DNA from: Saccostrea echinata
Taxonomy: Eukaryota
Direction: 5' to 3'
Length of the DNA: 64,000 nucleotides
Assembly (NCBI RefSeq): GCF_033153115.1
Contig: NW_026889774.1
Coordinates: 19,282,001-19,346,000 of the forward strand
Below are positions 32,201 to 35,200 of the stretch, piece by piece; position 1 is the first letter of the stretch, and the number at the start of each line of letters is the position of its first letter. The notes under the pieces were generated by a model. It was not told the DNA's origin and did not search any database. It worked only from the letters and a program-made list of their open reading frames with translations. The position numbers and the translations under genes were made by a program.

Positions 32201-35200
32201 CCAGCCTTGAAGAATACCTTAGTATTACCAAGACGGTACTCTGCAGGATCAAGCTGCAGAGCGAGCAGAACTTTCTCGGACACAACCTTTCCATCAACAA
32301 AGCCTTGTGGAATGGCATTAGGGGCCAAGATGGAGTATCTGTAAAGCAGAATTTTGATTTTGAAAGTTTGAGTTATAAGACTGCATAGAGCGACGATTAT
32401 TCATTGAAGTCAAATCAATCACAGTACCTCTGTTTGAATTCAGAGTAGATGACTCTGCTGGGAAATCCTTTGCGACAGATTCTGATACCCTCAAGTACAC
32501 CGTTACATTGAAGCTGATTGAGTACAAGAGCGGCATCAATCATTCCAGACTGTTTCAATTCGTTGGGAATGATGCAACGCACGAAGTGGGGATGAGTGCT
32601 GTACAAGTTCTTCATCAGTTTATTCAGAGACTCCTACAACAAATTAATTCATATGTCAATTAATTGGCATTTCACTCCAAACATATTCTACCAAAAACTT
32701 AGAATAGAAAGTGAATTAGGATAAAATGCATGCATTACCCTGTGGACAGCAGAGATAGTCTGGAAAGCAGAGGACTTCTTCTTCTTCTTTCCACCGCCGG
32801 CTTCAGGTTCAGGAGCTTGGAAGAGTTCCTTTACAAGGTGTTCTTTTGATTCAGATAGCAGGGCAACGACGTTCTCGTTGATTGGATCCTTGTTCTTCTC
32901 TAGCCAACCACTGATGTTATAACCAACAGAACCAGCATAGTGACCCAATGAGAAGTCAGGAGCGGGAACGCCGGGTCTTGGAGCCTTTCCTGGTTTTCCA
33001 AAGTTGGGGGATTTGCCCATGTGATTTTGGTACAGCTTGTCTTTGAATGACTTGTCGTCGGCCTTGGGGAACATGCATTCCTCTTCAAGGATGGACAGGA
33101 TACCCATAGGCTGAAAAAAAGTGTTTATTTATTCTCCCGAATTCTCAAACTAAACGTACATGTATGTAATATTTTAGTTTACAGACTAAACTTTGATACC
33201 CTACCTTCTCAATGAGCTCGATACAGGCTGCCAAGTCCATACCAAAGTCAATGAACTCCCATTGGATACCTTCCTTCTTGTACTCTTCCTGCTCCAGGAC
33301 AAACATGTGGTGGTTGAAAAACTGTTGAAGTCTTTCATTGGTATAATTGATACACAGCTGCTCAAAGCTGTTGAACTGTACAATGAAAATTAGATCATTT
33401 GAAAAAAAAAAGATAATTAACATTTGTTGTACAAATGACAATGTAGCTGTTCTCAGAATATGCATTGGTTTTCTTATAATTTACCTCAAAAATTTCGAAA
33501 CCAGCAATATCCAATACACCGATGTAGTAGTTTCTCTTGGCTTTGGTGTCCAAAGTTTTGTTGACTCTTTTGACCAGCCACTGGAACATACGGTCGTACA
33601 GAGATTTGGCCAAGGCACCAACGGAGTTGGTTACTTGCTCTTTGTTCTGACCCTTGAAGACAAACTCGGTTCCGACCTTGACCTTGGGTTTCAGCAAGCA
33701 TTTCAAAAAGTCTCCGGCGTTGATACCCAACAGGAAAGCGACCTTTTCAGGTTCTAAAAAAACGAGAATGAATATGAGAGAATTCATCCCGGACGAATAC
33801 AGTAAACTTTATAATACTTTTATGAAACAGTTTTTAAATAAATACATACCGGCAGTTCCATCAACCTCAGCCTGTTCACCCTTCTGCTTGAAGGTCATTT
33901 CACCCATATGCATGATGGAGGCTGTGCATTTGTACATGCTGTGCTTCTCTTCAGTGGTGAAACCAAGAATGTCAAAAGCTTCCTATATGATACAGTATCG
34001 TGCGTTAATAAAATGAAGTCAATACACGCTTATACGCGGTGACAAAAGTAAAATTACATCCAATCAAAATAGAATTATCTTTTTTTGTTGTTCCGCATAT
34101 ACATACATCGACCATTTTCATTTCTTCAACATCATCAATACCATCAACTGTCAAAGCACCTTGGTTGATAAATGAATAGAGGGCGGGATCGGGTGAGACC
34201 AGCAGAGGTTCTAAAAAGAGTTAAGGTGGGATAAGGATGAAAGGATGTGTGGACATACAGTTTGAATTGGAACGGTGTCCCATGAGAGATCAGTATGAAA
34301 TGACATTTTAGGCAGATTATATGGATTAAGACGTGGGAATGCAGTATCGAATTGACTGTTTAGAAAACTGAAATAGAATTGTTTTATGGTAGCGGAATCA
34401 GGAGAACGTTTGGAAGATTAAGTGACAAGTCTTTTAAAAACTCGTGACAACCTGTCTAGTAGAGGGTGTTTTTGGATTGCGGAGTTACAAAGAAATATAA
34501 AAAAAAGTTGGAAATATGAAGACCTTTGGGAAGAGAATCTGTGAAAGAATATATGAATTAAAGAAAATGAATAGATTTTTTGGAGTAGTATTAAGTTTGG
34601 GGTGTTGGTAAGCATTTCGAGATTCATGATACCAGGCTGCATTTTCTGAAAAAGAATCTATTAGTTCGATATGCTGTGTTATGGTACTTTTAAGAATGAA
34701 AAGAGATCGAGTTCGGATTAAAGGTTTTGGAATTCTTTTTGAAAAGAAGGACATTTCAATTCAGGGAGAAGGATAGAGTGACTGAAAGAAAATTTATTAG
34801 TTCGACATGGTAAAGGATTTTGACGGGATTTTATATCTCTTTAGAGTCAAGAGATATTTTGGAACCAGGTTTCCATATCAGAAGAAGAATAGAGTATATT
34901 AGAGGGGGAGAGGGACTTATTACAACGTACGTCCATCATTTTCATTTCCTCTACATCATTAATGCCATCGACAGTGAGTGCACCCTGATTGATAAAGCTG
35001 TACAGGGCCGGATCGGGTGAAACCAATAAAAGTTCTGTAAGCAGAATGCCATTACGTGATTTATATGACGTAAATGAGACGATGATTTACACAATATAAA
35101 ACTCAGACGGATTGGACAGTAGGTTGCATAGCTGCCTATTTAAGTCCTCTCCCGACGATGACGAGTGTAATTTTCTATGTTATATGAAATGAAATACTTC

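What the first reader, a model, noticed from the sequence alone, without database searches (positions are those of the whole stretch)
34906..35153. Complementary intronic elements flank motor exon A: candidate RNA-pairing switch for mutually exclusive splicing in a mollusc
Seen: sense GGGAGAGGACUUA (35153-35141, upstream intron) pairs over 13 bp, with one bulged C, to UAAGUCCCUCUCCC (34919-34906), 11 nt after the exon A donor. GCAGC/GUUGU could extend the helix toward the 5' splice site. The stem would loop out A and favour B. The 8-mer UAAGUCCC also occurs between the two hinge exons (about 30025-30018). Known: docking/selector pairings control arthropod Dscam and Mhc clusters. Inference: an analogous mechanism in bivalves, which I do not know to have been described.
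Basis: partly seen in the sequence, partly recalled or inferred. Interest (0 to 1): 0.8.

Follow-up and report, generated by a model that had tools for sequence, protein, structure and literature searches.

The report
Possible RNA helix masking myosin exon
In an oyster muscle myosin gene, the introns beside one of two alternative exons can pair into a strong RNA helix that would hide that exon's splice site. This is a plausible but unproven way of making the other exon the default.

Summary
On the minus strand lies a muscle myosin heavy chain gene, in a genome I infer to be Saccostrea echinata. It has two 104-nt mutually exclusive motor exons: A (35034-34931) and B (34210-34107).

The 13-bp stem with one bulged C exists exactly as described. 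Alone it is marginal: 170 of 3000 intron shuffles match it. It is, however, the outer part of a longer interrupted helix, 35153-35113 with 34935-34906. That helix buries the last 5 nt of exon A and the GUA of its donor. Its duplex energy is -33.1 kcal/mol, reached by 2 of 1000 shuffles and by 10 of 1200 natural same-geometry placements.

Abundant spliced RNA contigs in three runs use exon B and skip A, as the model predicts.

Against it:
- There is no second selector next to B, so this is not a docking/selector system.
- In the full 1371-nt pre-mRNA context the stem ties with other folds.
- In one related oyster the outer 3' arm differs at 3 of 14 positions, about the intron background. The 5' arm of that relative could not be seen.
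- The recurring 8-mer is chance.

My reading is exon looping-out and 5' splice-site occlusion, with confidence about 0.4. The covariation test could not be run.

The parts
35303..35400 (-). 3' part of the constant exon upstream of the cluster (ends at 35302/35303 boundary; ...NAIPELN)
   Evidence: Read. Boundary. RNA joint 35302->34210 in X5 and X6.
35141..35153 (-). Outer 5' arm GGGAGAGGACUUA, in intron I1 (35301-35035), 107-119 nt upstream of the exon A acceptor
   Evidence: Pairs with 34919-34906 in the MFE. Unique in the window at 0 mismatches.
35128..35139 (-).
   Evidence: MFE dot-bracket.
35113..35127 (-). Inner 5' arm GCAACCUACUGUCCA, complementary to the exon A 5' splice-site region
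   Evidence: Pair list. The same pairs appear in the 711-nt context.
34931..35034 (-). Exon A, 104 nt, first of the two mutually exclusive motor exons ([35 protein letters not shown])
   Evidence: The 3 listed differences in a relative (organism D) are all synonymous third-position changes (codons read).
34922..34935 (-). Inner 3' arm: last 5 nt of exon A plus intron +1 to +9 (UGGAC|GUACGUUGU), that is, the 5' splice site of exon A
   Evidence: Pair list. Duplex of 35157-35104 with 34950-34906 is -33.1 kcal/mol.
34906..34919 (-). Outer 3' arm UAAGUCCCUCUCCC; it is also the start of a 15-nt C/U tract (34915-34901)
   Evidence: In organism D, 3 of its 14 positions differ.
34764..34773 (-). Second, weaker C/U-rich partner of the outer 5' arm (UCCUUCUCCC) in intron I2
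   Evidence: Second-best duplex with the 5' arm, -14.8 kcal/mol over window 34772-34757. C/U run 34773-34763.
34107..34210 (-). Exon B, 104 nt, the alternative used in the abundant RNA contigs
   Evidence: Joints 35302->34210 and 34106->33981. No comparable helix at its donor (-19.7 and -18.6 kcal/mol).
33851..33982 (-). Constant exon downstream of the cluster (EAFDILGF...)
   Evidence: Joint 34106->33981 with 1 nt of ambiguity.

Best explanation
A local pre-mRNA helix silences exon A by default. An element in the upstream intron (35153-35113) is transcribed first. About 180 to 250 nt later the end of exon A and the first 25 nt of the next intron (34935-34906) emerge. The two can pair into an interrupted helix of about 26-28 bp. 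This helix encloses the branch site, acceptor and body of exon A in a loop and buries its 5' splice site (UGGAC|GUACGUUGU).

U1 snRNP would then fail to bind, exon A would be skipped, and the upstream constant exon would be spliced to exon B. Using A would require the helix to be opened or prevented. Candidates are the competing local hairpin of the upstream element, or a protein on the purine-rich or the C/U-rich arm. Transcripts carrying both exons or neither are out of frame, because each exon is 104 nt.

Shown: the sequences, the predicted helix and its statistics, and B-containing spliced RNA. Inferred: that the helix forms in vivo and that it controls the choice. It is a single looping and occluding helix, not a docking/selector competition.
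For: - The helix is in the MFE of the 301-nt and 711-nt contexts, and the core pairs have probability 0.67-1.0 in the 301-nt fold.
- The duplex is -33.1 kcal/mol, against a shuffle mean of -19.4 (sd 2.9). 2 of 1000 shuffles reach it. So do 10 of 1200 natural same-geometry placements, and 5 of 458 GC-matched ones.
- Controls sit at background: exon B donor -19.7 and -18.6 kcal/mol, and the single homologous exon of the paralogue on contig C2 -11.7.
- Both donors match the recalled U1 consensus equally poorly by my reading, so a structure could tip the balance.
- High-depth spliced contigs of X5, X6 and X11 carry B, and in X5 and X6 they join 35302 directly to 34210. Exon A appears only in low-depth unspliced contigs.
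- Exon A is still a constrained coding exon. A and B differ in 17 codons synonymously and 3 non-synonymously, and the 3 listed differences in organism D are all synonymous.
- Looping-out and hairpin control of alternative exons are established mechanisms (passages of PMC9198270; PMC6071210).
Against: - The core 13-bp stem alone is not beyond chance (170 of 3000 shuffles; 362 of 3000 for any intron pair).
- The extended-helix test was designed after the helix had been seen, so its roughly 1% tail should be multiplied by several alternative geometries.
- In the 1371-nt context the core pairs have probability 0.03-0.04. Other folds tie with it: enforcing the stem costs +0.1 kcal/mol there and +2.5 in the 1111-nt context. 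The competitors are a local hairpin at 35153-35109 (-14.9 kcal/mol) and donor A pairing with 34250-34281.
- In organism D the outer 3' arm differs at 3 of 14 positions, about the same as neighbouring intron. With an unchanged 5' arm the outer duplex would fall from -19.4 to -13.2 kcal/mol.
- A second relative's exon A ORF (P0151) also reads differently right after UAAG.
- Intron I2 is C-rich and G-poor (C 0.26, G 0.09), which makes partners for a purine-rich 13-mer easy to find.
- No A-containing spliced RNA was seen, so a switch as such is not shown.
- An unrelated invertebrate with the same kind of exon pair (L017) shows no such helix (96 of 400 shuffles reach it).
Confidence: 0.4

Rival explanations
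1. The complementarity is chance. The helix has no role. B is the default because its acceptor has the better polypyrimidine tract, and unknown tissue factors set the choice. Frame incompatibility (104 nt each) plus nonsense-mediated decay enforces exclusivity.
For: - The core stem is reached by 5.7-12% of shuffles.
- About 1% of natural same-geometry placements reach the extended energy. With several exons and geometries inspected, that is a few percent to about 10%.
- The outer 3' arm is no better conserved than surrounding intron in organism D.
- The global fold does not prefer the stem.
- I2 is pyrimidine-rich.
- The exon B acceptor region (...CUUAACUCUUUUUAG) is more pyrimidine-rich than that of A (...CAUUCUGCUUACAG), read.
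Against: - 2 of 1000 shuffles and 10 of 1200 natural placements is still a strong tail, and it falls exactly on the 5' splice site of the exon that is skipped.
- The exon B and paralogue controls are at background.
Confidence: 0.35
2. The C/U-rich tract after the exon A donor (34915-34901), with similar tracts further into I2, is a protein-binding intronic silencer or enhancer. The candidate factor classes, PTB or poly(C)-binding proteins, are recalled and were not tested. Pairing with the purine-rich upstream element would then be incidental, or would only modulate access.
For: - Four C-containing pyrimidine runs of at least 9 nt lie in I2, two of them within 170 nt of the donor.
- Two relatives keep a C/U-rich composition right after UAAG but not the exact sequence: the organism D loose end and P0151, which reads H-S-S-S-S-P-S. 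Composition kept without sequence suits a degenerate protein site better than a fixed helix.
- In organism D a single change turns the distal tract into the same 10-mer as the window's proximal arm, so motifs appear to turn over (differences at 34770-34778).
Against: - No binding data exist, and no motif enrichment test was run.
- I2 is pyrimidine-rich throughout, so such tracts are expected.
- This reading does not explain the complementarity to the splice site itself (35127-35113 with 34935-34922).
Confidence: 0.2
3. A true docking/selector system as in arthropod Dscam, 14-3-3 zeta or Mhc: one docking site competes for a selector next to each alternative exon.
For: A mutually exclusive pair in an Mhc gene. 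Competing structures are reported for insect Mhc (passages of PMC6071210).
Against: - Each arm is single-copy in the window at up to 3 mismatches apart from scattered chance hits; the 5' arm complement gives 9 matches against 9.58 expected.
- The only second partner of the 5' arm also lies downstream of A, and none lies beside B or in I3, where the best duplex is -6.1 kcal/mol.
- The introns flanking A and B show no residual homology (33 of 68 and 33 of 70 aligned columns identical).
Confidence: 0.03

Closest known systems
Exon looping-out or hairpin occlusion of an alternative exon by flanking intron sequences. An example is the hairpin controlling exon 6B of chicken beta-tropomyosin (mentioned in PMC9198270, passages seen; the original papers are recalled, not read).
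   Same: One of two mutually exclusive exons of a muscle gene is enclosed by base pairing between sequences on both sides. The helix involves a splice signal. The enclosed exon is the one skipped by default.
   Different: Different phylum and gene. Here everything rests on prediction; there is no mutational or probing evidence. The helix is about 240 nt end to end, with a 13-bp outer and a roughly 13-bp inner part.
Docking-site/selector competing pairings of insect Dscam1, 14-3-3 zeta, Mhc, MRP1 and srp (PMC6071210 passages; search listings of PMC4691838 and PMC3535345).
   Same: Intronic RNA pairing proposed to decide which mutually exclusive exon is used, and the same gene family (Mhc).
   Different: No competition is seen: there is one docking-like element and one strong partner, and no selector per exon. 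The helix would repress the exon it encloses rather than activate the adjacent one.
Human ATE1 exons 7a/7b, controlled by competing intronic helices (PMC7797038, abstract start in the listing; passage of PMC9198270).
   Same: A two-exon mutually exclusive cluster outside the arthropods with RNA-structure control. This shows the principle is not arthropod-specific.
   Different: ATE1 uses competing and ultra-long-range helices that were validated by mutagenesis. Here there is a single short-range helix, not validated.
Predicted mutually exclusive clusters of mollusc Mhc genes: Crassostrea gigas Mhc1 with clusters 5 and 11 (PMC3912159, passages).
   Same: The exon pair itself. This gene has one motor-domain pair plus a hinge pair, as that paper states for C. 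gigas Mhc1. The paralogue on contig C2 has a single exon at this position, consistent with that paper's Mhc2 lacking cluster 5.
   Different: In the passages I saw, the paper describes exon clusters only, not their regulation. 'Secondary structure' occurs once in the paper, in a reference title.

Membership tests
Docking/selector competing RNA pairing (Dscam exon 6 type) | One docking site complementary to two or more selector sequences, one beside each variable exon | tested here: not met
   Mismatch searches for both arms found no further copy in the cluster. A duplex scan of the 5' arm gave one strong partner (-20.5 kcal/mol), a second at -14.8 that is also downstream of A, and nothing near B or in I3.
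Docking/selector competing RNA pairing (Dscam exon 6 type) | Docking and selector sequences conserved among related species | tested here: inconclusive
   In organism D the outer 3' arm differs at 3 of 14 positions. Only 30 letters of its upstream sequence were shown, and they stop short of the 5' arm.
Exon looping-out / splice-site occlusion by flanking intronic complementarity | Complementary segments in the introns on both sides of the regulated exon | tested here: met
   35153-35113 in I1 pairs with 34935-34906 at the end of exon A and the start of I2.
Exon looping-out / splice-site occlusion by flanking intronic complementarity | The helix covers a splice signal | tested here: met
   The predicted pairs include the last 5 exon nt and the GUA of the donor, 34935-34928. 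This is a prediction only.
Exon looping-out / splice-site occlusion by flanking intronic complementarity | Stability beyond chance | tested here: inconclusive
   Extended helix: 2 of 1000 shuffles and 10 of 1200 natural placements. The test was framed after the helix had been seen. Core stem alone: 170 of 3000. It ties with other folds in the 1371-nt context.
Exon looping-out / splice-site occlusion by flanking intronic complementarity | The enclosed exon is the one skipped | tested here: met
   High-depth contigs of X5 and X6 join 35302 to 34210. X11 carries the joint from B to the downstream exon. No spliced contig with A appeared in any of the 4 runs laid. Contigs drop rare variants.
Exon looping-out / splice-site occlusion by flanking intronic complementarity | Covariation, or a disruption-and-rescue effect on splicing | not testable with these tools
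The metagenome, genome and viral scans gave no oyster orthologue.
Mhc mutually exclusive exon cluster (cluster 5 of Kollmar and Hatje) | Tandem homologous exons of equal length, with the same splice phase and a length that is not a multiple of 3 | tested here: met
   Both exons are 104 nt. 79 of 104 nt are identical and 31 of 34 residues are identical.
Mhc mutually exclusive exon cluster (cluster 5 of Kollmar and Hatje) | Position equivalent to cluster 5 of the published scheme | not tested
   Inferred from the paper's statement that C. gigas Mhc1 has clusters 5 and 11. I made no alignment to the published numbering, and the supplementary figures were closed.
Pyrimidine-tract protein silencer flanking a repressed exon | C/U-rich tracts close to the repressed exon | tested here: met
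   Runs at 34915-34901, 34773-34763, 34751-34741 and 34537-34528. No enrichment test was made, and protein binding is not testable here.

The most novel reading that the evidence does not exclude
Oysters choose between two myosin motor variants with a riboswitch-like structural toggle. The upstream intron element either folds on itself (local hairpin 35153-35109) or clamps the 5' splice site of exon A. Its pyrimidine partner can move between redundant C/U tracts during evolution, as organism D hints. That would put structure-driven mutually exclusive splicing of Mhc in Lophotrochozoa as well as arthropods, either by convergence or as an old bilaterian trait.
Probability: 0.12. Interest if true: 0.65.

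Novelty: new member of a known kind. Interest (0 to 1): 0.35.

Why it matters
In the papers I saw, RNA-structure control of mutually exclusive exons is documented in insects and in a few vertebrate genes. My searches found nothing for molluscs.

Bivalve muscles depend on myosin isoforms made by alternative splicing. Passages of PMC3912159 describe distinct catch-muscle and striated-muscle isoforms in scallops. A simple helix that can be tested by mutation and that sets the default motor exon would give a handle on how those isoforms are chosen. It would also widen the phylogenetic range of the mechanism.

If the helix turns out to be fortuitous, the locus is an ordinary, already predicted Mhc exon pair.

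Tried and rejected
Repeat or transposon origin of the arms is rejected. A whole-genome DNA search with the 1331-nt cluster found only the locus itself and the homologous exon of one paralogue. A protein search found only exon A, exon B and that paralogue exon.

The paralogue on contig C2 has a single exon at this position, so it cannot serve as an internal conservation test.

A known RNA family in the region is rejected: 0 Rfam matches at E up to 1.

RNAduplex on whole introns was useless, because it allows unlimited loops. A lenient helix score fell into the linear regime and was uninformative. I replaced both with a strict score and with windowed duplexes.

Attempts to reach orthologous DNA:
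- The representative search gave only fragments and a Haliotis model.
- The exon A ORF search gave 5 ORF-type hits from relatives.
- The metagenome scan gave 22 loci. None is an oyster orthologue carrying both exons.
- The genome contigs and viral-contig scans found nothing.
- Cluster look-up gave no names.

Annotating every exon of the gene by tblastn, for an exon-by-exon control, was dropped because HSPs merged across short introns.

I never joined exons into a spliced model. Exons were searched one at a time.
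Full report
WHAT IS THERE

The region lies in a minus-strand muscle myosin heavy chain gene. Single exons hit Pfam Myosin_head (E 8.3e-29) and Myosin_tail_1 (E 8.7e-18).

The genome is very probably Saccostrea echinata. A protein named for that species (P0272) has a longest contig of 33,264,178 bases, which is exactly the length of contig C2 of the window's assembly.

Reading the sequence and locating boundaries gives this layout:
- upstream constant exon, ending at 35302
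- intron I1, 35301-35035 (267 nt)
- exon A, 35034-34931
- intron I2, 34930-34211 (720 nt)
- exon B, 34210-34107
- intron I3, 34106-33983 (124 nt)
- downstream constant exon, starting at 33982

Both alternative exons are 104 nt, so including both or neither shifts the frame. They differ at 25 of 104 nt. Of the differing codons, 17 are synonymous and 3 are not (L/P, N/D, M/V). This is an old duplication under strong purifying selection. The flanking introns keep no homology.

The pair fits the motor-domain cluster that Kollmar and Hatje predicted for Crassostrea gigas Mhc1, which they describe as having clusters 5 and 11 (PMC3912159, passages). The only paralogue found in this genome, on contig C2, has a single exon at this position. 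The exon pair itself is therefore already known in kind. The finding is about the flanking RNA.

THE OBSERVATION

It is correct to the base. GGGAGAGGACUUA lies at 35153-35141 and UAAGUCCCUCUCCC at 34919-34906, beginning 11 nt after exon A. They give 13 bp with one bulged C, at -19.4 kcal/mol.

Folding 34880-35180 puts this stem in the minimum-free-energy structure, with pair probabilities of 0.67-1.0.

- a 12-nt local hairpin follows at 35139-35128
- GCAAC (35127-35123) pairs with GUUGU (34926-34922)
- UAC (35121-35119) pairs with the GUA of the donor (34930-34928)
- GUCCA (35117-35113) pairs with the last five exon bases (34935-34931)

The 5' splice site of exon A is therefore inside the helix.

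IS IT MORE THAN CHANCE?

For the 13-bp stem alone, hardly. With a strict helix score it is the best pairing between I1 and I2. However, 170 of 3000 dinucleotide shuffles do as well, and 362 of 3000 do if any pair of the three introns is allowed.

For the extended helix the case is better. The best duplex between a 54-nt window of I1 and the 45 nt around the exon A donor is -33.1 kcal/mol. Shuffled I1 gives a mean of -19.4 (sd 2.9), and 2 of 1000 shuffles reach it. Natural sequence taken from the same window with the same geometry reaches it in 10 of 1200 placements, and in 5 of 458 GC-matched ones.

Controls are at background:
- exon B donor against I2, -19.7 kcal/mol, and against I1, -18.6
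- the paralogue's single exon, -11.7

This test was framed after the helix had been seen. The roughly 1% tail should therefore be inflated several-fold.

The recurring 8-mer in the hinge intron is chance: 2 matches found, 1.43 expected.

RESULTS AGAINST A UNIQUE, STABLE HELIX

In the full 1371-nt cluster the core pairs have probability of only 0.03-0.04. The MFE there folds the upstream element on itself (35152-35144 with 35117-35109; this local hairpin is -14.9 kcal/mol). It pairs the exon A donor with 34250-34281 instead.

Enforcing the stem costs only +0.1 kcal/mol in that context and +2.5 in a 1111-nt context, and it is the MFE in a 711-nt context. The alternatives are therefore nearly isoenergetic. 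Since the arms are transcribed about 180 to 250 nt apart, the short-range helix could form before its downstream competitors exist. That point is inference.

RNA EVIDENCE

I laid contigs of four public runs on 33850-35450.
- X5 (same organism label as the assembly) and X6 (a second label, with identical exons): contigs at depth 218 to 3146 join 35302 directly to 34210, and 34106 to 33981. This is upstream exon, then B, then downstream exon, with A skipped.
- X11 (a different label, about 5% exon divergence): it behaves as RNA, with depth about 10^4 on exons and about 10 on introns, and it has the joint from B to the downstream exon.
- X10: it had no contig over exon A.

Exon A appears only in low-depth unspliced contigs, in X5 (depth 8.4) and X11 (depth 10.4). 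No A-containing joint was seen in any of the 4 runs. Contigs drop rare variants, so this shows that B dominates, not that A is unused.

Exon A is nevertheless constrained. The three listed differences in X11 (35003, 35015, 35018) are all third-position synonymous changes when read.

CONSERVATION, THE DECISIVE TEST, COULD ONLY BE TOUCHED

The scans of metagenome, prokaryote-genome and viral collections returned no oyster orthologue.

What can be seen comes from one unspliced X11 contig. It aligns over 34916-35083 with 4 differences, then diverges at both ends.

Downstream of ...UAAG it reads CCCAUUCCCG..., where the window has UCCCUCUCCC. That is 3 changes in the 14-nt arm, about the same as neighbouring intron by my hand alignment. 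Other I2 pieces of that run show 25 substitutions and 16 gap letters over 204 nt, and 16 and 14 over 174 nt.

With an unchanged 5' arm the outer duplex would weaken from -19.4 to -13.2 kcal/mol.

Only 30 letters of the upstream continuation were shown, and they stop about 30 nt short of the 5' arm. Compensation therefore cannot be judged.

A second relative's ORF-type protein, P0151, matches the exon A flanks (ILIAE|A... before the exon, and VRWNK after the donor). It then reads H-S-S-S-S-P-S, so it is again C/U-rich but not the same sequence.

In X11 one substitution at 34770 turns the distal tract (34773-34764) into the same 10-mer as the window's proximal arm. This could mean partner turnover, or simply drift within a pyrimidine-rich intron (I2 has C 0.26 and G 0.09).

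WHAT IT IS NOT

It is not a docking/selector system. Neither arm has another copy in the cluster. The only other partner of the 5' arm is weaker and also lies downstream of A, and nothing sits next to B or in I3.

It is not a repeat and not a known RNA family.

An unrelated invertebrate with a comparable tandem exon pair (L017, from a metagenome) has no comparable helix: 96 of 400 shuffles reach its value.

MOST LIKELY MECHANISM AND ODDS

I put about 0.4 on a functional helix that occludes the exon A 5' splice site and loops the exon out, making B the default. This is the mechanism class of looping-out and of the beta-tropomyosin exon 6B hairpin (PMC9198270 passages), not the Dscam type.

I put about 0.35 on chance complementarity, with the choice set by the stronger exon B acceptor and unknown factors. 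I put about 0.2 on the C/U tract being a protein site, with pairing incidental. I put about 0.03 on a real docking/selector arrangement.

NOVELTY

RNA-structure control of mutually exclusive exons is known in insects, including Mhc (PMC6071210 passages). It is also known in vertebrates, for example ATE1 (listing; passage).

Two full-text searches combining mollusc terms with RNA-pairing terms returned only the Kollmar and Hatje paper, which contains none of the RNA-pairing search phrases (0 occurrences in the listings).

If real, this would be a new member of a known kind in a new phylum. It would be moderately interesting and easy to test. As it stands it is a well-placed, thermodynamically strong, but evolutionarily unverified helix.

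Noticed in passing
window 33983 (loose end of run X11): A contig of X11 that ends at the start of the downstream constant exon continues with 24 letters. These read like the end of the upstream constant exon of that relative. That would be a junction skipping both A and B, which is out of frame and a likely decay target, unless it is an assembly artefact. Its depth was not shown.
   Followed up: no
window 34764-34773: This is a second C/U-rich tract able to pair with the 5' arm (-14.8 kcal/mol). In run X11 one substitution at 34770 makes it the same 10-mer as the window's proximal 3' arm, while the proximal arm itself has diverged.
   Followed up: partly
window 34250-34281: In the 1371-nt MFE the exon A donor pairs with this stretch, about 40-70 nt upstream of the exon B acceptor. 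The stretch is heavily substituted in runs X10 and X11, with 12 listed differences between 34247 and 34277. The pairing is therefore probably not conserved.
   Followed up: partly
L006 8552-8656 (G000 contig C2, about 3,448,551-3,448,655): A paralogous muscle myosin gene has a single exon where this gene has A and B, with the neighbouring intron positions the same. A 2628-nt high-depth RNA contig of runs X5 and X6 matches it rather than the window (12 differences over 34119-34184).
   Followed up: partly
L016 408-506 and 1771-1869; L017 9310-9413 and 9996-10100: Two metagenome-collection contigs from an unidentified GC-rich invertebrate carry a tandem pair of the homologous exon, 104 nt for the first copy. 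This looks like another mutually exclusive cluster at the same position. No donor-occluding helix is present.
   Followed up: partly
L009 570-665 and 783-875: In another metagenome contig the exon before this one ([11 protein letters not shown]...) matches twice in tandem, while the exon homologous to A/B is fused to the next exon. This may be a different mutually exclusive cluster in another animal.
   Followed up: no
window 34899-34911: The two low-depth contigs of run X5 break exactly over the poly-C/U part of the 3' arm: one ends at 34898 and the other starts at 34912. This may reflect length polymorphism or low coverage there. Most of their differences were not listed.
   Followed up: no
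window 34211-34930: The sense strand of intron I2 is markedly C-rich and G-poor (C 0.26, G 0.09, pyrimidines 0.61), compared with I1 and I3.
   Followed up: no
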